Under the pieces are notes generated by a model. It had not been told where the DNA came from and made no database searches. It worked only from the letters and a program-made list of their open reading frames with translations. A stretch of DNA of 52,389 nt from Octopus bimaculoides (lineage: Eukaryota): contig NC_068983.1 of assembly GCF_001194135.2 (NCBI RefSeq), positions 155,715,496 through 155,767,884 of the forward strand. Direction: 5' to 3'. A program made the translations under genes and the position numbers. Shown in pieces: positions 1,454-47,541 of the stretch. Position 1 is the first letter of the stretch. Each line of letters opens with the position of its first letter.

Positions 1454-1525
1454 AGGGATATAGCTCAGTGCGAGAGCAGTCAACTGCAGATCGATAGATC
1501 TCCGATTCAATCACGGGTGCCCCCT
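1454..1525 (+). pseudogene. tRNA-Cys(GCA) pseudogene
   Basis: AGGGATA-TA-GCTC-AGTGCGA-GAGC-A-GTCAA-CTGCAGA-TCGAT-AGATC-TCCGA-TTCAATC-ACGGG-TGCCCCT. Cloverleaf order and GCA anticodon loop match eukaryotic tRNA-Cys, but there are mismatches in the acceptor, anticodon and T stems and the D-loop GG is lost. Confidence 0.75.
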
Positions 1526-7362: not shown

Positions 7363-7543
7363 ATGGGAGAATATACAAATAATAACAACAGACGAGGAGA
7401 GGTGGTGTAAATAACAAAAGTATATATTAGTATGACGCTCGGGAATACGGAAAGTCTTTGACGTTTCGAGCTACGCTCTTCAACAGAAAGAATACGGAGA
7501 CAAGGAGAAAGACACGGAGAAAAAAAAAATTGAATAGTGTTCA
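7363..7543 (-). mobile_element. ~196-bp hammerhead-bearing non-autonomous element (family B), copy 1, 5' end lost in N gap
   Basis: Reverse complement of 44654-44849 apart from a few substitutions and a longer A run. Confidence 0.9.
7455..7491 (-). ncRNA. Minimal type I hammerhead ribozyme motif, A6U variant
   Basis: TCTTT-CTGTTGA-A-GAGC-GTA-GCTC-GAAAC-GTC-AAAGA: stem I TCTTT/AAAGA, stem II GAGC/GCTC, palindromic ACGT stem III, GUC cleavage triplet. Confidence 0.7.
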
Positions 7544-7770
7544 NNNNNNNNNNNNNNNNNNNNNNNNNNNNNNNNNNNNNNNNNNNNNNNNNNNNNNNNN
7601 NNNNNNNNNNNNNNNNNNNNNNNNNNNNNNNNNNNNNNNNNNNNNNNNNNNNNNNNNNNNNNNNNNNNNNNNNNNNNNNNNNNNNNNNNNNNNNNNNNNN
7701 NNNNNNNNNNNNNNNNNNNNNNNNNNNNNNNNNNNNNNNNNNNNNNNNNNNNNNNNNNNNNNNNNNNNNN

Positions 7771-7806
<36 letters not shown>

Positions 7807-7811
<5 letters not shown>

Positions 7812-8394
7812 ATGATAAATTGAGTATTAATTCAATTTAAAACCAAGGGGCCTAGCATATAATAAAATCTGAGAATTCAGAAAAAAATGTATTACACGTG
7901 TATATGGGATGACCACTAGGTGGACATCCAATATGCTAGAAAGAGGTCATGAACGACCTAACCACAAAAAAAAGTAATGTTCTCCAGAAAAATTTTGCAA
8001 AACCCCAGAACAGGACAAAATTAGAAATATACAGAATAAAGAATTATCTATGGACTGCAGTTTCGAACATTAACCTTTTACTTACGTAGCAGCATGCGTG
8101 TTCTCATCAGCATAGACGTTCTAGAATCAATATAATTTGCAGAACTATACACGAATTGTCTTCATGAAATAAAACTTGCATATAATTCTACCAATTACAT
8201 TGTGGTTATTTCTCAAAATGCCTCAGCTCCGGCGCGCAAAATTCCGGAAACAATTCTGCAGAGAATAATGCACTGCAGTATATGTTGCCGGCTGCAGAAC
8301 ATAACTATTTAAATTATTATTCATATAGATAGGGTGATAAATTGTGTATTAATCCAATTTAAAACTAAGTGGCCTAGCATATAAAAAAAATCTG
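7807..8394 (-). mobile_element. Non-coding ~522-bp unit with ~65-bp terminal direct repeats and an internal hammerhead (retrozyme or Penelope pseudo-LTR-like)
   Basis: 7807-7871 and 8329-8394 are direct repeats with about 6 differences (ATAGG[A/G]TGATAAATTG[A/T]GTATTAAT[T/C]CAATTTAAAAC[C/T]AAG[G/T]GGCCTAGCATATAA...AAAATCTG). No ORF. HHR at 8047-8116. Abuts (TA)n. Confidence 0.75.
8047..8116 (-). ncRNA. Type I hammerhead ribozyme with canonical core
   Basis: Minus strand reads TCTATG-CTGATGA-GAACA-(29 nt)-TGTTC-GAAAC-TGCA-GTC-CATAGA. All conserved core bases are present; stem I is 6 bp, stem II 5 bp, stem III is the palindrome ACTGCAGT. Predicted cleavage between 8053 and 8052. Confidence 0.9.
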
Positions 8395-8399
8395 CTCTT

Positions 8400-9182
8400 T
8401 TTGAAATCTTTCCCTGAGAGATATCTAATCCTCTGATGACTACTAATCCTCCTGCATAGATCCCATATTTTAGTATCTATTCTACTGATAGCAGAATCTA
8501 TTTCCTAGTCATTTCTAGCAGCTTCCTTCTGTTTGTGCCTCTTAATGCTAGCAATCTTTTTCTTCTTTCATTACTTCCTGCAGCTCATCTAAAATCTTCT
8601 GGTCTTGCTCACTTAAATCACTTAAATCGCTGGTGCCGGTTGTCCCTTCCTTATTAGTAGCGGCATTATTATTTTTTCCTTCGATTCTTCTTTGGTTTCA
8701 GCCGTATCTCTTATGTTGTTCTTTGTCTTTCCTACTGCCTGGTCTTCCTTTTCCAGTTCTCTTGTGATCTCTTGTGCCTTCAATTCTGTCACCCCCTTTC
8801 TTCTACTAATAGTATTAGCTTCATCTACTAATACCTACTCAGCCACTTTAAACATACCCTTCTCTACCCAAAGTGTTTGTATCCGTTTTCTATAGCCCCT
8901 TGTTTTAGGTTCACTTTCTAAGTCGCACTGCATCACTATACTGTTTTCTTCACTGGTTCACTTCCACCCTCTTGTTCTATTATCTGCTTATGCTGTATTA
9001 GGGTAACAGCTGCGGTCAGTGTGCATCTTTACTGAACCACTGCCGAGTGAGAGGCCTTTCCTTAATAGTCCAGCTTTATTTTCGCTGTTACACCAGAGTT
9101 TCTTCGGAAACTCCTGTCTCTCATAAACTGAGGTAAGGTAACGCTCGTTACCATCGTCATCACTACTGTTATTTTTAGACAT
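8400..9182 (-). mobile_element. R4/Dong-type non-LTR retrotransposon, N-terminal ORF relic
   Basis: Minus frame RGWK*TSEENSIVMQCDLESEPKTRGYRKRIQTLWVEKGMFKVAE*VLVDEANTISRRKGVTELKAQEI resembles the N-terminal motif of R4/Dong-like ORFs (W..E.N..M.CY...P.RGYRKRM..W...GMF.V.EQRL.DQ). In-frame stops. Confidence 0.7.
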
Positions 9183-9416
9183 CCGAAAATTTCAAGCAAC
9201 TTTCTATTGCATCATTCGTTGCACCTTTATGCTGGCGATGTAGTATGTGCTGCATTTTTTTTGTGGGTGAGGTATATTGTATTGTATCAGTACGTTTTGT
9301 TATGGGGTTTGGTTCAGTCTTCTGTTGTATTACTTTTTGTATTGTGTGTTGTTTGTGGAGCGCACGTTGTGTTTTTCTGTCGGATCGGCCCTTTATGGCA
9401 CATGTTGTGGGTTTTT

Positions 9417-9451
9417 CATCATCATCATCATCATCGTCGTCGTCGTCGTTG

Positions 9452-9540
<89 letters not shown>

Positions 9541-9541
9541 T
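9417..9541. repeat. Graded triplet microsatellite (TCA)n-(TCG)n-(TTG)-(TTA)n
   Basis: Seen directly; the (TTA)n part abuts the 3' end of the Dong-like copy. Confidence 0.95.
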
Positions 9542-10398
9542 TATGTTTGACTTTTGTTTTGCATTTGTACAAGTTGGATCCAAGTCTCACCCAGAGACCT
9601 CAAGAGACAACAAGTTAGAAGTTCATGTAGGTGTTATGCCTAGGGTACCATATATTTGGATTTGTACAGTTTTGTTCTAGTGAATGTTTAAGAAACCATA
9701 AGAAAATTATGTGTTTGTTTTAAAATTTGAGATCACATAGACAGAATTTTACGTAGGATATGGGNNNNNNNNNNNNNNNNNNNNNNNNNNNNNNNNNNNN
9801 NNNNNNNNNNNNNNNNNNNNNNNNNNNNNNNNNNNNNNNNNNNNNNNNNNNNNNNNNNNNNNNNNNNNNNNNNNNNNNNNNNNNNNNNNNNNNNNNNNNN
9901 NNNNNNNNNNNNNNNNNNNNNNNNNNNNNNNNNNNNNNNNNNNNNNNNNNNNNNNNNNNNNNNNNNNNNNNNNNNNNNNNNNNNNNNNNNNNNNNNNNNN
10001 NNNNNNNNNNNNNNNNNNNNNNNNNNNNNNNNNNNNNNNNNNNNNNNNNNNNNNNNNNNNNNNNNNNNNNNNNNNNNNNNNNNNNNNNNNNNNNNNNNNN
10101 NNNNNNNNNNNNNNNNNNNNNNNNNNNNNNNNNNNNNNNNNNNNNNNNNNNNNNNNNNNNNNNNNNNNNNNNNNNNNNNNNNNNNNNNNNNNNNNNNNNN
10201 NNNNNNNNNNNNNNNNNNNNNNNNNNNNNNNNNNNNNNNNNNNNNNNNNNNNNNNNNNNNNNNNNNNNNNNNNNNNNNNNNNNNNNNNNNNNNNNNNNNN
10301 NNNNNNNNNNNNNNNNNNNNNNNNNNNNNNNNNNNNNNNNNNNNNNNNNNNNNNNNNNNNNNNNNNNNNNNNNGATCTTGGGCTGCTATGATAAACCC
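9542..10398 (-). mobile_element. R4/Dong-type LINE 3' portion, mostly in N gap
   Basis: Minus strand reads GFIIAAQD at 10398-10374, then the gap, then HILRKILSM* (stop 9733-9735), a 3' UTR and an (AAT)n tract. Confidence 0.75.
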
Positions 10399-10575
10399 TT
10401 CTGGCTTGAAATCAGAAACAGAGGGGTTTATCATAGCAGCCCAAGATCAATGCCTACCTACAAAGAACTACCAGGCCAACATATTAAAGAACGGCAGCTC
10501 CCCATTATGTCGTATATGCCAACAACAAAATGAGACCATCGATCATGTTGTCTCCATGTGCAGTCTGCTTGCGCC

Positions 10576-10577
<2 letters not shown>
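10399..10577 (+). mobile_element. R4/Dong-type LINE fragment with CCHC zinc knuckle
   Basis: SGLKSETEGFIIAAQDQCLPTKNYQANILKNGSSPLCRICQQQNETIDHVVSMCSLLAP contains the C-x2-C-x7-H-x4-C motif of RLE-clade elements and runs directly into (TTA)n. Confidence 0.9.
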
Positions 10578-10646
<69 letters not shown>

Positions 10647-10724
10647 CATTGTTTTTCTGTATTTTGAAAATACATTTTATTTCCATTGTTGAACTCAGAT
10701 ACTGATAATAGAGAGAGATTTATC

Positions 10725-17024: not shown

Positions 17025-17062
17025 GTTTCGGCTGATACACCATCCTGCCTTCTTCAGGTGTC
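17025..17062 (-). ncRNA. Hammerhead remnant lacking the cleavage site
   Basis: GACAC-CTGAAGA-A-GGC-(14 nt)-GCC-GAAAC. The following bases (AAGATG) supply neither an NUH triplet nor a partner for GACAC. Confidence 0.6.
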
Positions 17063-17119: not shown

Positions 17120-17186
17120 ATTTGCTTGGAATCGAACGCGGAATCTTGGGGTTAGCCCGCGTTCTTAACCACTACGCCATATGCCC
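17120..17186 (-). promoter_or_regulatory. tRNA-like Pol III internal promoter (A-box and B-box)
   Basis: A-box TGGCGTAGTGG (17179-17169) and B-box GTTCGATTCC (17137-17128) at tRNA-like spacing. Confidence 0.7.
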
Positions 17187-17944
17187 GTGGAGAATTATGG
17201 AGTGAATTTTAGGGCTTATAAATCTAATATTCTACTATCCTTCCTTAATATCGGTTCCCATATGCTACTCATAGCTGCACTCGGTATGCTTAGGAGGTTG
17301 TTGTGTCTTAGCATATGTGCTGCTTCTTTTAGTTTTCGTATTTTCCAGTGGTGTTCTCTGTCTATTATTTTAACTTCATCCCACAGGGGAAGAAGGTCTC
17401 AATTTTTTCATACATGATCAGCTATACCCAATTTATCAATATCTCCTCATGTCACAGCTTTTCGATGTTCGTCTACTCTTATTCTGAGGGTGCGGCATGT
17501 TTCGCCTTTGTATGACCTACCACAGCTGCATGGGATGGAGTACACGTAGTCTTTGGTCATATTCTCTTCTATTAGTGGTTTTATTCGAAGAAGATATTTG
17601 CGAAGTGTTGTATTACTTTTGAATATTGTCCTGATGTCATATGGGCCACATATCTTTTTTATCTTTTCGGAGAGGACTTTCACATAGAGTAGACAGACTA
17701 TGGACAGTTTATTGGCCGCATCCTCTCTCTTGTTCATAATTGGAGCGGATAGTATACTTTTGGGGTAGTTGTTGCTTAACAGATCGTTATTGAGCTTGAT
17801 CATTTCTTCGTGGTGTGTATCACGATCGCTACTAATATTCTTTGCACGATGTTTTAGGCACTGAGCAATCCCTCTCTTTACACTTTGTGTCTGTAGAGCT
17901 TGTCTCGAACCAGCAGAACGTCTCCCACGTGGTAATGCCAAGCC

Positions 17945-19560
17945 AGGGATTTCTGAAAATTATCCTTAGGTCTCAACCAAAAAGTCCTCCGGAAAAGATG
18001 AGCTAGCTGATTGCTCATTGTCGAGACGTCCCAAGTAAAAACGCCCAGCATCTGAAGAAATCAGGCTGCCTCGACTGAGTCGGGGCGTACACAGTGAATA
18101 GTCTATTGCTCACATCCAAGACCACTAACTTACCATCCGTGTCCAGGAAGATCGTCCGTATCTCGAGATCCAGAACTTTCCTAAACAATATTACCATTCC
18201 ACCTCTCATTCCAGGCCGACTAAGAGGTGCGTAAATCTCAAAGTTGTCGAAAATAGGGGCCAGATCGTGTGTGTCAGAGATCCTGGTCTCCCTGACGCCC
18301 GACACATCCATAGCTAGTGACCAGAGGTCGTTGAGCAGGTGGCATTTCCTTCATTTATACAACCTTCTCTTAAAAGTACCATGATGCTCGGAAAGTGTTC
18401 AGAACAAGAGAAAAAATAGTGTAGAGGGTGTTACTTACCTATTGGATGTCGCTGGAAGTCAGGTGGTTCAACCATCATATCATGTTATGGTTCCTTTGGG
18501 AACCTCCTTCATAGCCTTATTCTTTCACATTAGGGGTTCTCACGTCGTGAGGGAAGCTCTACCTAATATTTTCATATATGGCTGGTTGTTGCTGTTGGGA
18601 GAGTTTCCATTTAGGGATTTGTTATGCTTGTGGTAGTGTTTATGAAGCTGTTGGTGATAGCGGTGGTTGTGATAGCGGAGGTGCATCTGTTGTTGGTCTT
18701 GTTGTGTTGTTGTTGCTGCTGTTGGTGTTCTTCCAGCATTTACTGATTTTGCTGTTCCTGTTCAGGATGCCATTGTTGCTGGGGTCGGTGTCGCTTTTGT
18801 TGTTGTTCACTGATGGTTTATTTCTTGTGGCTTTTGGGGACCTGGTGCTAGCAGTAAGAGAGTTGTATAATTCCTTAACTTTGTTGAGAGAAGAAAGCTT
18901 TCAAGTGGCCAGTTTCCCCGCACAGTTGGAACCGAGGCCTTCTTCACTCCCTCAAGGGAGGCGAATAAAGTTCGGAATTTTGTGGTTCCTGTTTGCTTTG
19001 ATGTGAAGTAACACCTCCATACTGATCCCACACTAATTATCCAGACAGGTTGGCTTCAACTCCAGGGGGCACCTCTCTTCCAAGACGACGCAAGCCAAAA
19101 TCCACCATTTATTAACCGTATGTGAAATTCCTGAGAATTTCCCGCTCACCATCTTCCTTCCAAAATTATGATGAATGGAGTACATATTTTTCGCATCCAC
19201 AGCGAACCACAGAGTAATTCGCTGTCGGTACGATAGCACAGAAATGCCCGCCAATTGCTTGACTCTCAGGATATACTGAATGTCGGGCATTATTACTTTC
19301 AACATCCTTTCTACGTCTGTCTGATTAGCTGTCTCTGGCCGTTTTGTGTTTTTTTTTTAAATATTATTTTTTGTATTTATGCCATCATCTCGAGCTGGTG
19401 GGGATGACTATGACATCCCATGATATTTCAAGCTTGATCAGTTTTGCCGCTTGGGCTAGACGTATGTCTTTCTTTAGGATATCCATCTTATACAGTTCAC
19501 TGCATCTAACAGCCGTTGCTTCGACTGTACTACAGTTGTCATTGTTGTTGATGTTGTTAT
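17945..19560 (-). mobile_element. L1/Tx1-like LINE 5' region: ORF1 relic and AP endonuclease
   Basis: ORF 18015..18311 (VRETRI...GGMVILFRK.L...IFLDTDGKLVVLDV...FTVYAPT...PDFF) matches the L1/Tx1 APE domain. The upstream S/T/N/P-rich broken frames are assigned to ORF1 by position only. Confidence 0.75.
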
Positions 19561-33279: not shown

Positions 33280-33445
33280 GGACTTGATAAACTGCGAAAT
33301 ATGTACAGGGAATAGTTTTTCTCTCAGAAAATATTCCTGAATATATATGAATACACACGCGCGCGTGCGCACGTACACACACACATGCACTCACTCATAC
33401 ACGCACATACACACATATTGTTATTTTCAAGCAAGTATCTTACTA

Positions 33446-33490
33446 ACAGGAACTTCGAAGTTTCGGCGACTTAAGCCATCGTCGGACTGC
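33446..33490 (-). ncRNA. Type I hammerhead motif, U4C variant
   Basis: GCAGT-CCGACGA-T-GGC-TTAAGTC-GCC-GAAAC-TTCGAA-GTT-CCTGT. Stem III palindrome ACTTCGAAGT; stem I has a mismatch at the first pair. Confidence 0.55.
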
Positions 33491-33683
33491 GAGGCATTAG
33501 AGTTAAACTTGGCTTTATATAGCTTCTGGTGAGTTAAAAAATTTCGGTTGAATGTCTATTGAAGTTAATCTTGGCTTTATGTAGTCTCTGTAGTCTCACA
33601 CATACCCAAGGAAGATTTTAACCCAACAGGGGCTATATAAAGCCAAGATCAACTTCATTACATTGCAGTCCGACGATGGCTTA
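33472..33683. repeat. 52-bp inverted repeat (44/52 identical) with a third partial internal copy
   Basis: 33472-33523 versus 33632-33683; partial copy GAAGTTAATCTTGGCTTTATGTAG at 33561. Confidence 0.85.
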
Positions 33684-34685
33684 GCCACCTGGAGTAGGCG
33701 TCCTCCTGGGCTTAAAAATAGCAGTAATGTCGATTCCTACGGAACAAACAGTTTTGAATGGCAATACATTTCAAAATCGACAGGACAAAAATAGAACATG
33801 TCTCCCCTAGTATATTGGCTTTAGAATGCATAATCGCTATCTCTCAGAGAAGTATAACGCTTCATTATAAAATTTTTATCTTGCAATTTAGTACATCCGA
33901 TCGGATATAGAGAATTCTTATACATGATTCTGTTACTAGTTTCTCGGGCATTTTTAGATACAAACCGTTGAAAAGAGCAAATACCATTGTTTTATTGGTA
34001 GATGGAACAGAGAAACGTGATCTTGTGCGTTTGAGCTAGTGATTGCAATGTGCTTAGGGGGTTTGCGTCTGTCAATTGACCTAGTGACCTTAATTTGCAT
34101 GTTTTCTGTTGTCTATGTATGCACGGAAGCCGTATCTAAGAGTTAAAGTATTACAGTGAATACAATACACAGGGCATCGAACATCTCACAAGGAAAGTAA
34201 TCTGTCATTGACGTTGCGCTGTGTGTTTAAGTGTGAGTGAGAGAGCACGTGTGTGTGTGTGCAAGAGTGAGAGTGTGCGTGTGTGTATGCATGTATACCT
34301 TTCCAAGAGACGAGACACAAGCAACTTGCGCCAGCACAGGAGTAAACAGCTTCTAACTGCAGGCGTAGTGCACAGGAGCAGTGTGAAGCTAAAGAGTTGT
34401 TTATTGACTCGCAGTTAGAATTATACGTAGCTATTTAGACCCAAAACAACTTTTCAAGACAAACATGAACTTAGGTTTGTTGTATGTAAGAAAATAATTG
34501 TATAAACTAATAATTAAAAAGAGCGAAAAAGAAAGTAGGATTCAGTAATAATATAATTCGTATGGGGAATTAATATGTGGCAATATGGAACAAACATTTT
34601 CTGTGTTTGTTTCTTTATTAGCTAGTTGCCCTGGAGGTGCCTTCGGAGAGTGCAAAGTACTATCTTCTAATCTTATCACTTTAAC

Positions 34686-44653: not shown

Positions 44654-44845
44654 TATGATTGACCGTTGACTGAACACTATTCAATTTTTTTTCTCCGTGT
44701 TTTTCTCCTTGTCTCCGTATTCTTTCTGTTGAAGAGCGTAGCTCGAAACGTCAAAGACTTTCCGTATTCCCGAGCGTCATACTAATATATACTTTTGTTA
44801 TTTACACCACCTGTCCTCGTCTGTTGTTATTTTTTGTATATTCTC

Positions 44846-44849
<4 letters not shown>
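44654..44849 (+). mobile_element. ~196-bp hammerhead-bearing element (family B), copy 2
   Basis: Differs from 47346-47541 by one base by my reading; the 3' end runs into (TA)n. Confidence 0.9.
44721..44757 (+). ncRNA. Minimal type I hammerhead motif, A6U variant
   Basis: TCTTT-CTGTTGA-A-GAGC-GTA-GCTC-GAAAC-GTC-AAAGA; predicted cleavage after C44752. Confidence 0.7.
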
Positions 44850-47345: not shown

Positions 47346-47541
47346 TATGATTGACCGTTGACTGAACACTATTCAATTTTTTTTCTCCGTGTTTTTCTCC
47401 TTGTCTCCGTATTCTTTCTGTTGAAGAGCGTAGCTCGAAACGTCAAAGACTTTCCGTATTCCCGAGCGTCATACTAATATATACTTTTGTTATTTACACC
47501 ACCTGTCCTCGTCTGTTGTTATTATTTGTATATTCTCCCAT
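47346..47541 (+). mobile_element. ~196-bp hammerhead-bearing element (family B), copy 3
   Basis: Same boundaries as 44654-44849; preceded by TA-rich low-complexity DNA. Confidence 0.9.
47413..47449 (+). ncRNA. Minimal type I hammerhead motif, A6U variant
   Basis: Identical to 44721-44757; predicted cleavage after C47444. Confidence 0.7.

What the first reader, a model, noticed from the sequence alone, without database searches (positions are those of the whole stretch)
7807..8394. Canonical hammerhead ribozyme inside a ~522-bp, direct-repeat-bounded, ORF-less unit (retrozyme-like)
Seen: the minus strand at 8116-8047 reads TCTATG CTGATGA GAACA...TGTTC GAAAC TGCA GTC CATAGA, a type I HHR with every core base, three stems and a GUC site. 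It lies between ~65-bp direct repeats 522 bp apart, giving about 1.1 tandem units, next to (TA)n. Established: Penelope-like elements carry type I HHRs in partially tandem pseudo-LTRs, and metazoan non-LTR retrozymes are tandem HHR units that yield small circular RNAs. Palindromic stem III (here ACTGCAGT) is associated with dimeric cleavage. Inference: this is a non-autonomous, possibly circRNA-producing retroelement family of a cephalopod, and I do not know of a description of it.
Basis: partly seen in the sequence, partly recalled or inferred. Interest (0 to 1): 0.85.

Follow-up and report, generated by a model that had tools for sequence, protein, structure and literature searches.

The report
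Hammerhead ribozyme in octopus retroelement copy
A convincing self-cleaving hammerhead RNA motif sits in one old, non-coding ~520-bp retroelement copy of an octopus genome; ribozyme-carrying, Penelope-related repeats of this kind are already known to be widespread in animals, so this is an ordinary new example and not a new class.

Summary
The minus strand at 8117-8046 carries a complete type I hammerhead: helix I of 7 bp, CUGAUGA, helix II of 5 bp closed by G10.1-C11.1, GAAA, a 2-bp helix III with palindromic UGCA loop, and a GUC site. It is the only such motif in the window, and none of this quality occurred in 300 Mb of random sequence. It lies in a 522-bp unit without an ORF, preceded by a 66-nt partial copy of its own 3' end (89% identical) and followed by (TA)18.

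This partial-tandem, TA-associated layout is typical of Penelope-like elements (PLEs) and their non-autonomous derivatives, the metazoan non-LTR retrozymes. The window is octopus DNA.

New here: the unit RNA is unusually self-paired (z -6.2). A 24-bp hairpin with G.U pairs forms only in the ribozyme's polarity.

The stronger claims are not supported. The locus has one ribozyme, so it cannot release a unit-length or circular RNA. No second copy was found in the window or in about 115 kb of other cephalopod DNA, and octopus genomes could not be searched as DNA. Rfam's Hammerhead_1 model does not report it.

Verdict: a new member of a known kind, probably an old dead-end monomer. Interest is low to moderate.

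The parts
8046..8117 (-). Type I hammerhead ribozyme motif: helix I 7 bp, CUGAUGA, helix II 5 bp with a 29-nt loop, GAAA, helix III 2 bp plus palindromic UGCA loop, GUC
   Evidence: Sequence read. The descriptor scan finds it as the only hit in the window. The only Rfam alignment is a sub-threshold one to RAGATH-1-hammerhead.
8052..8053 (-). Predicted self-cleavage site: 3' of C17 (8053), with the new 5'-OH end at 8052
   Evidence: Follows from the hammerhead numbering applied to the sequence. Not tested experimentally.
8128..8202 (-). Hairpin specific to the ribozyme-sense strand (10 + 14 + 5 bp, 6 G.U pairs), 11 nt upstream of the hammerhead
   Evidence: minus sense -24.9 kcal/mol, z -5.45, 0 of 200 shuffles as stable; plus sense -6.6 kcal/mol, z -0.11; 6 G.U pairs among the 29 predicted pairs.
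7807..8328 (-). One full 522-nt unit (34% GC, no ORF), read 8328 to 7807 in ribozyme sense. It begins just inside a TA-like decamer and ends with the 65-nt terminal segment.
   Evidence: repeat geometry; no ORF; circular fold -139 kcal/mol against -105 +/- 5.5 for shuffles, z -6.2.
8329..8394 (-). Upstream 5'-truncated partial copy: 66 nt equal to the 3' terminal segment of the unit
   Evidence: 59 of 66 identical to 7871..7807. Searches agree. Similarity ends abruptly at 8394/8395.
8322..8331 (-). Degenerate TA stretch (TATCTATATG in ribozyme sense) between the partial copy and the body of the full unit, matching the start of the (TA)n that follows the full unit
   Evidence: BLAST extends the repeat alignment into the TA run, 7801 matching 8323.
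7807..7871 (-). 3' terminal segment of the full unit, the downstream copy of the direct repeat
7771..7806 (.). (TA)18 microsatellite abutting the 3' end of the element in ribozyme sense: either the target or a 3' tail
   Evidence: (TA)n is given as a preferred PLE target in PMC8557442. A compact HHR element in L002 and the 195-bp repeat family also end at (TA)n.
7544..7770 (.). Assembly gap (227 N) that hides what follows the (TA)n. About 17 nt of it are accounted for by the 5' end of the neighbouring 195-bp repeat.

Best explanation
The locus is a single, old genomic copy of a short non-coding retroelement. Its RNA, the minus-strand transcript, carries a canonical metazoan type I hammerhead ribozyme.

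Shown:
- The motif is complete.
- The insertion has the PLE style of architecture. In ribozyme sense it reads: a 66-nt 5'-truncated partial copy of the element's 3' end, a short TA stretch, one full 522-nt unit, then (TA)18.
- The unit has no ORF.
- The ribozyme-sense RNA is unusually self-paired and holds a hairpin that forms only on that strand.

Inferred:
- The element belongs to the PLE-dependent, retrozyme-like class. In that class, transcripts of tandem master copies are cut by the ribozyme, which here probably acts as a dimer through the ACUGCAGU palindrome of helix III.
- The RNA, circularised or multimeric, is copied by a PLE reverse transcriptase primed at a TA-rich nick. That gives slightly more than one unit of cDNA.

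This particular copy has one ribozyme. It can cut its own transcript once but cannot release a unit-length or circular RNA. The 11% divergence between its two repeat copies suggests it is roughly 10-20 million years old and inert. I favour a non-autonomous (retrozyme-like) monomer over a 5'-truncated autonomous PLE, but only weakly.
For: - Motif and statistics.
- Canonical metazoan build: PMC4209133 describes helix I of about 6 bp, helix II of about 4 bp, helix III of 1-2 bp with a 2-4 nt palindromic loop, and G10.1-C11.1. PMC7229834 describes a 2-bp helix III capped by a tetraloop as typical of invertebrate HHRs.
- Dimer behaviour: the hammerhead-constrained fold is -8.6 kcal/mol against an MFE of -14.1, while the helix III palindrome self-duplex is -12.5 kcal/mol.
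- Partial-tandem geometry and the clean boundary at 8394.
- PLE hallmarks from the literature: partial tandems, short terminal extensions, (TA)n targets, HHR near the 3' end (PMC8557442).
- Single HHRs are mostly truncated PLEs or monomer derivatives (PMC4209133; Li et al. 2026).
- PLEs are present in this genome: a remnant at 17237-17944(-) carries a min-type HHR core at 17026-17057(-). The same core follows the PLE ORF ends in L002 and L014. This PLE family's ribozyme differs in type from the finding's and shares no sequence with the unit. Canonical HHRs are reported mainly in retrozymes and minimal ones in PLEs.
- Self-pairing: z -6.2 for the circular unit in ribozyme sense. The hairpin has z -5.45 in ribozyme sense and z -0.11 in antisense.
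- No coding remnant: tblastn with PLE proteins finds nothing in the unit, and the longest open frame is 58 codons.
Against: - Only one copy could be examined, so there is no covariation, no copy number and no evidence of mobility. No empty site is available.
- No tandem array with two or more ribozymes exists at this locus.
- The 522-nt unit exceeds the 170-400 nt reported for invertebrate retrozyme RNAs, although it lies inside the 51-972 bp range of Li et al. 2026.
- Loop 2 is 29 nt, atypical for canonical HHRs whose loops 1 and 2 interact, so fast cleavage is doubtful.
- The Rfam hammerhead models do not reach threshold.
- Excess self-pairing also occurs in an unrelated control region (33282-33803, z -9 to -11), so on its own it is not specific.
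- The unit's 5' boundary could equally be a random truncation point within a long PLE 3' UTR.
Confidence: 0.55

Rival explanations
1. The unit is simply the 5'-truncated 3' terminal repeat (pLTR) of an autonomous, possibly already catalogued, octopus Penelope-like element. It was inserted as the usual partial tandem, and the hammerhead is that PLE's own terminal ribozyme.
For: - Most PLE insertions are 5'-truncated and keep a single terminal repeat (Li et al. 2026).
- Most single HHR motifs in metazoan genomes were attributed to truncated PLEs (PMC4209133).
- Octopus genomes hold at least 30 recently active Penelope families (PMC13282606).
- Some PLE HHRs have a small palindromic helix III.
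- The architecture and the (TA)n association fit equally well.
Against: - There is no RT or GIY-YIG coding remnant in or next to the unit. The only PLE remnant lies 9 kb away.
- That remnant and its relatives carry a different, min-type HHR core and share no sequence with the unit.
- The canonical HHR build and the strongly self-paired RNA are more typical of retrozymes.
- None of these points excludes a different PLE family as the parent.
Confidence: 0.33
2. The locus is part of an active tandem retrozyme array. Further units are collapsed or hidden in the 227-N assembly gap, and the array is transcribed and processed into about 522-nt circular RNAs.
For: - Tandem and PLE-type insertions are known to break short-read assemblies (PMC8557442).
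- The gap starts right after the (TA)n.
- The unit RNA is highly self-paired, like retrozyme circRNAs.
Against: - The stated gap of 227 nt is smaller than one unit, and about 17 nt of it belong to the neighbouring 195-bp repeat.
- The element's 3' end is already marked by the (TA)18.
- The two repeat copies differ by 11%, so the copy is old.
- Only one ribozyme is present.
Confidence: 0.05
3. The hammerhead-like string is a chance match in an unrelated low-copy repeat and has no ribozyme ancestry.
For: - Only one copy is available.
- The thermodynamic z-score of the 86-nt motif region is unremarkable (-0.27).
- No Rfam hit reaches threshold.
Against: - There were 0 hits of comparable quality in 300 Mb of random sequence and 0 in 400 shuffled windows.
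- Features not required by the descriptor are also present: G10.1-C11.1, a GUC triplet, a palindromic helix III and a closing stem beyond loop 1.
- The context is PLE-like, with a partial tandem and (TA)n.
- There is a strand-specific hairpin in the same polarity.
Confidence: 0.03

Closest known systems
Metazoan non-LTR retrozymes (Cervera & de la Pena 2020, PMC7229834; Li, Clavereau & Pollet 2026, bioRxiv 10.64898/2026.07.22.740005)
   Same: A canonical type I hammerhead with a 2-bp helix III and palindromic tetraloop. A non-coding, AT-rich (34% GC) unit of a few hundred bp. Head-to-tail repetition. A strongly self-paired RNA in ribozyme polarity. Coexistence with PLEs in the genome. Monomer derivatives are described as common.
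   Different: This locus has only 1.12 units and one ribozyme, so it has no excisable monomer. The 522-nt unit is longer than the 170-400 nt RNAs reported for invertebrates. Loop 2 is 29 nt. Copy number, expression and circularity are unknown.
Hammerheads in the terminal repeats (pLTRs) of Penelope-like elements (Cervera & de la Pena 2014, PMC4209133; Craig et al. 2021, PMC8557442)
   Same: A type I HHR near the 3' end. An insertion built from a 5'-truncated upstream copy plus a full copy. Association with a (TA)n microsatellite. A helix III adapted to dimer formation. Most genomic copies are solitary.
   Different: No RT/GIY-YIG ORF is attached. The HHR is of the canonical type, not the minimal type: it has no bulged base between positions 9 and 10.1, and helix III is present. 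The PLE family visible in this window and in L002/L014 carries the minimal type.
Newt satellite 2 and Schistosoma Sm-alpha hammerhead repeats (the classical 'double-hammerhead' elements; own knowledge, also cited in PMC7229834)
   Same: A type I HHR with a very short helix III whose palindromic loop lets two copies form an extended intermolecular helix III. The repeats are non-coding units of a few hundred bp.
   Different: Those are long tandem arrays or SINE-like families with thousands of copies and demonstrated cleavage. Here there is one solitary copy and no experimental data.

Membership tests
Hammerhead ribozyme, type I (Rfam RF00163 / clan CL00010) | Conserved core CUGANGA ... GAAA ... 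UH with the A15.1-U16.1 and G10.1-C11.1 pairs | tested here: met
   Sequence. Descriptor scans.
Hammerhead ribozyme, type I (Rfam RF00163 / clan CL00010) | Three helices around the core, with helix I open and helices II and III capped (type I topology) | tested here: met
   Helix I 7 bp, helix II 5 bp, helix III 2 bp plus tetraloop. The hammerhead fold is not the monomer MFE: -8.6 against -14.1 kcal/mol.
Hammerhead ribozyme, type I (Rfam RF00163 / clan CL00010) | Score at or above the family's gathering threshold in the covariance model | tested here: not met
   No hit at gathering thresholds. In E-value mode Hammerhead_1 gives no hit, and RAGATH-1-hammerhead gives 21.4 bits against 56.3. The cause is probably the 29-nt loop 2. 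A compact cephalopod HHR also stays below threshold, at 26.5 against 34.
Hammerhead ribozyme, type I (Rfam RF00163 / clan CL00010) | Site-specific self-cleavage giving 2',3'-cyclic phosphate and 5'-OH ends | not testable with these tools
   Needs in vitro transcription of monomer and dimer constructs.
Metazoan non-LTR retrozyme | Tandem repeats with at least two type I HHRs, so that a monomer RNA can be excised | tested here: not met
   There are 1.12 units and one HHR. The locus would count as a 'monomer derivative' in the sense of Li et al. 2026.
Metazoan non-LTR retrozyme | Non-coding, low-GC unit of a few hundred bp | tested here: met
   522 nt, 34% GC, no open frame longer than 58 codons. 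This is above the 170-400 nt of PMC7229834 and inside the 51-972 bp of Li et al. 2026.
Metazoan non-LTR retrozyme | Multi-copy family in the genome | not testable with these tools
   No octopus genome can be searched as DNA here. No second copy was found in the 52-kb window, in about 115 kb of cephalopod loci, through translated frames or through a metagenome pattern scan.
Metazoan non-LTR retrozyme | Expression as highly self-paired linear and circular RNA | tested here: inconclusive
   Predicted self-pairing is strong (z -6.2 in ribozyme sense, -3.55 in antisense), and there is a strand-specific hairpin. One unrelated control region is even more structured. Expression and circularity are not testable here.
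Penelope-like element terminal repeat (pLTR) | HHR-bearing repeat arranged as a partial tandem (5'-truncated copy upstream of a full copy), often at (TA)n | tested here: met
   Literature criteria are from PMC8557442.
Penelope-like element terminal repeat (pLTR) | Physical or sequence link to an RT + GIY-YIG ORF | tested here: not met
   tblastn with 13 PLE protein fragments hits only 17237-17944(-), 9 kb away. The unit shares no sequence with that remnant's flank or with PLE loci L001-L003 and L012-L014. Only a few PLE families were sampled, so a link to another family remains open.

The most novel reading that the evidence does not exclude
The copy represents an undescribed octopus family of PLE-dependent, (TA)n-tailed non-coding elements, whose master copies are tandem and produce circular RNAs of about 520 nt. 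Its ribozyme would be unusual in carrying a 29-nt insertion in loop 2 and a neighbouring hairpin specific to the ribozyme-sense strand. The 195-bp (TA)n-associated repeat with a min-HHR-like motif lies in the same window. Together they would suggest that part of the very large 'unclassified SINE' fraction of octopus genomes consists of PLE-mobilised, hammerhead-derived elements.
Probability: 0.25. Interest if true: 0.45.

Novelty: new member of a known kind. Interest (0 to 1): 0.25.

Why it matters
If confirmed as a family, it would extend hammerhead-bearing non-autonomous retroelements to cephalopods. Their genomes are unusually repeat-rich, with about 12% SINEs, most of them unclassified, and PLE bursts (PMC13282606). 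That would give a concrete handle, namely HHR plus (TA)n tail plus partial tandem, for reclassifying some of those repeats as PLE-dependent.

The concept itself is established: type I hammerheads in PLE terminal repeats and in retrozymes, dimeric helix III, and circRNA intermediates. A single solitary copy adds little beyond a taxonomic data point.

Tried and rejected
1. Rfam scan of the whole window at gathering thresholds: only a tRNA-like hit at 1454-1525, no ribozyme.
2. Other copies of the unit in the window: none.
3. Relatives through translated frames of the unit. The word-index search with the 49-aa frame found nothing. The exhaustive HMMER search with the 58-aa frame gave one spurious 24%-identity hit. 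Exact look-ups of three unit ORFs found nothing.
4. Metagenome scan for CTGATGAG-N20-50-CGAAACTGCAGTC: 8 hits, all without helices I and II and unrelated.
5. Test of whether the degenerate reading frame just upstream in ribozyme sense (8395-9200) belongs to the same element. There were no Pfam hits, no homologues, and no similarity to PLE loci by tblastx. It is treated as a separate, unidentified retroelement remnant.
6. Idea that the unit is a diverged dimer of about 220-260-nt sub-repeats, prompted by four CTGCAG sites. The best internal local alignment scores 20, against a shuffle mean of 18.4 and maximum of 29, so the idea is rejected.
7. Use of the window's own PLE remnant as parent: no sequence similarity and a different HHR type.
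8. Strand asymmetry of whole-unit folding as proof of RNA-level selection. This was weakened because a control inverted-repeat region shows a similar asymmetry in z. Only the local hairpin asymmetry is kept as evidence.

Full report
**1. The observation**

Read on the minus strand, 8117..8046 is GUCUAUG CUGAUGA GAACA [29 nt] UGUUC GAAA C UGCA G UC CAUAGAU. Every invariant hammerhead position is present: C3-A9, G12-A14, A15.1-U16.1, H17 = C. The G10.1-C11.1 pair that closes helix II in natural hammerheads is there too.
- Helix I has 7 bp, the outermost a G.U pair. The predicted fold continues it beyond a 1x2 internal loop with four more pairs, a plausible loop 1 and closing stem.
- Helix II has 5 bp.
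- Helix III consists of A-U and C-G capped by UGCA, which makes ACUGCAGU an 8-nt palindrome.

A descriptor of my own finds this as the only hit on either strand of the window. It finds none in 400 Markov-shuffled windows under strict criteria and 0.0275 per window under relaxed criteria. In 300 Mb of random sequence of the same composition nothing of comparable quality appeared: 0 hits at helix I >=6 / helix II >=5, and 2 hits at I >=5 / II >=4.

The 66-nt direct repeats (8394..8329 and 7871..7807) are 89% identical and 522-523 bp apart. (TA)18 lies at 7771-7806 and is followed at once by a 227-N assembly gap. No frame is open for more than 58 codons.

One caveat concerns Rfam. It does not report the motif at gathering thresholds. 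With permissive thresholds only the RAGATH-1 hammerhead model aligns, at 21.4 bits against a gathering score of 56.3, and Hammerhead_1 gives nothing. I attribute this to the 29-nt loop 2, which is an inference. A compact hammerhead found in other cephalopod DNA also stays under the threshold, at 26.5 against 34 bits.

**2. Source of the window**

The window is a gappy, 36% GC eukaryotic draft with 12 N-runs. A degenerate ORF at 17237-17944(-) encodes the C-terminal RT/HTH and GIY-YIG part of a Penelope-like element (PLE). Its best match is an Octopus sinensis protein at 71% identity. Repeats left of the finding match an O. sinensis chromosome segment at 77-92%.

**3. Anatomy in ribozyme sense (8394 to 7771)**

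The order is:
1. a 66-nt segment A (8394-8329);
2. a degenerate TA stretch TATCTATATG (8331-8322), whose first three bases (TAT, 8331-8329) are also the last three aligned bases of segment A;
3. about 450 nt of body, containing a long hairpin (8202-8128) and, 11 nt later, the hammerhead (8117-8046);
4. segment A again (7871-7807);
5. (TA)18;
6. the gap.

Similarity stops cleanly at 8394/8395. This amounts to one full 522-nt unit preceded by a 5'-truncated copy of its own 3' end, with each copy followed by TA repeats.

Craig et al. (PMC8557442) describe this layout for PLEs: partial tandems that form pseudo-LTRs, short terminal extensions, a bias for microsatellites with (TA)n as a preferred target, and hammerheads near the 3' end. 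Cervera & de la Pena (PMC4209133) note that most metazoan hammerheads occur as single elements, probably truncated PLEs. Li et al. 2026 describe retrozyme monomers as common and derive non-LTR retrozymes from PLE terminal repeats.

**4. The ribozyme type**

The motif has the canonical metazoan type I build, which PMC4209133 gives as helix I of about 6 bp, helix II of about 4 bp, and helix III of 1-2 bp with a small palindromic loop. PMC7229834 describes a 2-bp helix III with a tetraloop as typical of invertebrate HHRs.

As a monomer the hammerhead fold is 5.5 kcal/mol worse than an alternative in which C3-G5 pairs with the CAG of helix III (-8.6 against -14.1 kcal/mol). The helix III palindrome forms a self-duplex of -12.5 kcal/mol. 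The 29-nt loop 2 is atypical and makes classical loop 1-loop 2 contacts uncertain.

**5. Relation to PLEs seen here**

The PLE remnant in the window is followed by a tRNA-like stretch and a minimal-type hammerhead core, CUGAAGA-A-GGC...GCC-GAAA, at 17026-17057(-). The same core follows the PLE ORF ends in two other cephalopod loci, L002 1896-1931 and L014 10924-10955. That PLE family therefore carries the minimal HHR with the bulged base described for PLEs. This differs from the finding's canonical HHR. The unit also shares no sequence with that remnant or with about 115 kb of PLE-containing cephalopod DNA.

In Acropora, canonical HHRs were found in retrozyme tandem repeats and minimal ones in PLEs. 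This tilts the reading towards a retrozyme-like, non-autonomous element. It does not exclude a different PLE family as parent, because octopuses have at least 30 recently active Penelope families (PMC13282606).

**6. New evidence on the RNA**

Folded as a circle, the 522-nt unit in ribozyme sense has an MFE of -139 kcal/mol against -105 +/- 5.5 for dinucleotide shuffles, so z is -6.2. The antisense strand gives z -3.55. Of 13 control regions from the window, 12 have z between +1.2 and -2.8. One, at 33282-33803, is an obvious inverted repeat with z -9 to -11. Whole-unit self-pairing is therefore notable but not specific.

The hairpin at 8202-8128 is more telling. In ribozyme sense it folds at -24.9 kcal/mol, with z -5.45 and no shuffle out of 200 as stable. 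In antisense it folds at -6.6 kcal/mol with z -0.11. Six of its 29 predicted pairs are G.U, and these become A.C mismatches on the other strand. This points to a structure maintained at the RNA level in the polarity of the ribozyme, as reported for the 'highly self-paired' retrozyme RNAs.

**7. What the locus can and cannot do**

With one ribozyme, a transcript of this locus can be cut once. It cannot yield a unit-length RNA with two ribozyme-made ends, so it cannot yield a circle. The gap of 227 N is shorter than a unit, and about 17 nt of it belong to the next repeat.

The two copies of segment A differ by 11%. If they were identical at insertion, the calibration used for O. vulgaris repeats (JC 0.09 is about 25 My) puts the age at very roughly 10-20 My. 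That is an inference from only 66 nt. At that age an intact 72-nt motif is not improbable by luck, so its intactness is not evidence of selection on this copy.

**8. Mechanism proposed**

This section is inference. Tandem master copies elsewhere are transcribed. The hammerheads, pairing through helix III, cut the multimer into monomers. Host ligase may circularise them. A PLE reverse transcriptase, primed at a nicked TA-rich site that pairs with the element's own UA-rich stretch, copies slightly more than one unit. That would give the 1.12-mer seen here. A linear-RNA alternative fits equally well: two successive template copies, each ending in (UA)n, with the upstream one 5'-truncated. A single copy cannot separate the two.

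**9. Searches for relatives**

None of the following found another copy:
- self-BLAST of the window;
- translated frames of the unit;
- exact ORF look-ups;
- a metagenome pattern scan, which gave 8 chance matches lacking the helices;
- loci around PLE fragments.

No tool here searches octopus genomes as DNA. In the paper library, no article that mentions hammerhead ribozymes or retrozymes together with octopus or cephalopods appears to describe such an element; the only relevant one, Craig et al. 2021, concerns PLE clades.

**10. Verdict**

The motif is a genuine hammerhead by every sequence criterion. It sits in a PLE-style, non-coding, structured retroelement copy. The kind is well known, the octopus instance appears undescribed, and this copy is probably an inert monomer. 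Confidence by reading:
- real HHR-lineage retroelement: about 0.9;
- retrozyme-like non-autonomous element: about 0.55;
- truncated autonomous PLE: about 0.33;
- active circRNA locus: about 0.05;
- chance: about 0.03.

Interest is 0.25.

Noticed in passing
window 7364-7543 (-, 5' end runs into the gap), 44654-44848 (+), 47346-47540 (+); L001 16171-16352: A 195-bp repeat family has three copies in the window at 96-98% identity and one copy in O. sinensis at 79%. Its sense 3' end abuts (TA)n. It carries a motif that fits the minimal PLE hammerhead descriptor except for U instead of A at core position 6: UCUUU CUGUUGA A GAGC-GUA-GCUC GAAA CG UC AAAGA, at 7455-7491(-), 44721-44757(+) and 47413-47449(+). 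There were no such hits in 300 shuffled windows. The O. sinensis copy has a compensatory helix I change (CCUUU/AAAGG). It is probably a PLE-derived short element with an inactive or variant ribozyme.
   Followed up: partly
window 17237-17944 (-), 17125-17180 (-), 17026-17057 (-); L002 1896-1931; L014 10924-10955: A degenerate PLE ORF remnant (RT C-terminus/HTH plus GIY-YIG, 71% identical to an O. sinensis protein) is followed by a tRNA-like stretch and a minimal hammerhead core, CUGAAGA-A-GGC..GCC-GAAA. That core is conserved downstream of PLE ORF ends in two other cephalopod loci.
   Followed up: partly
L002 2070-2238 (ENA ERZ21867824, ctg101516l): This is a compact element. A tRNA-like sequence with A- and B-box-like motifs is followed after 11 nt by a 43-nt type I hammerhead (Rfam Hammerhead_1 26.5 bits, E 3.6e-4). 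Seven nt further on comes (TA)n. It looks like a SINE-like element with a ribozyme tail. ARAGORN calls no tRNA there, and no other copy was found in the data held.
   Followed up: partly
window 8395-9200 (-): One minus-strand frame of about 260 codons with several stops lies directly upstream of the element in ribozyme sense (for example ...RGYRKRIQTLWVEKGMFKVAE*VLVDEANTISRRKGVTELKAQEI...). It looks like a decayed retroelement ORF. It has no Pfam hit, no homologue and no match to the PLE loci.
   Followed up: partly
window 9733-10705, around the gap 9765-10373: The C-terminal zf-RVT part of a LINE ORF2 is present in both orientations, with a palindromic junction near 10375-10447. The same peptide start, MINPS...EGFIIAAQD, is read on both strands. 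This is either a real inverted duplication or an assembly artefact. An (AAT)n tail lies at 9431-9555 on the minus strand.
   Followed up: no
window 33282-33803: A control segment chosen at random is extremely self-complementary on both strands (z -9.2 and -11.4). It is presumably an inverted repeat, or a MITE-like or foldback element.
   Followed up: no
window 1454-1525 (+): This is the only Rfam hit at gathering threshold in the window: a tRNA-like sequence with several non-canonical pairs (31.8 bits, gathering score 29). It may be a SINE head or a tRNA pseudogene.
   Followed up: no
window 18015-18311 (-): An ORF resembles the N-terminal part of a LINE AP-endonuclease (...LFTVYAPTQ...). It lies immediately upstream of the PLE remnant on the same strand and has no Pfam hit.
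   Followed up: no
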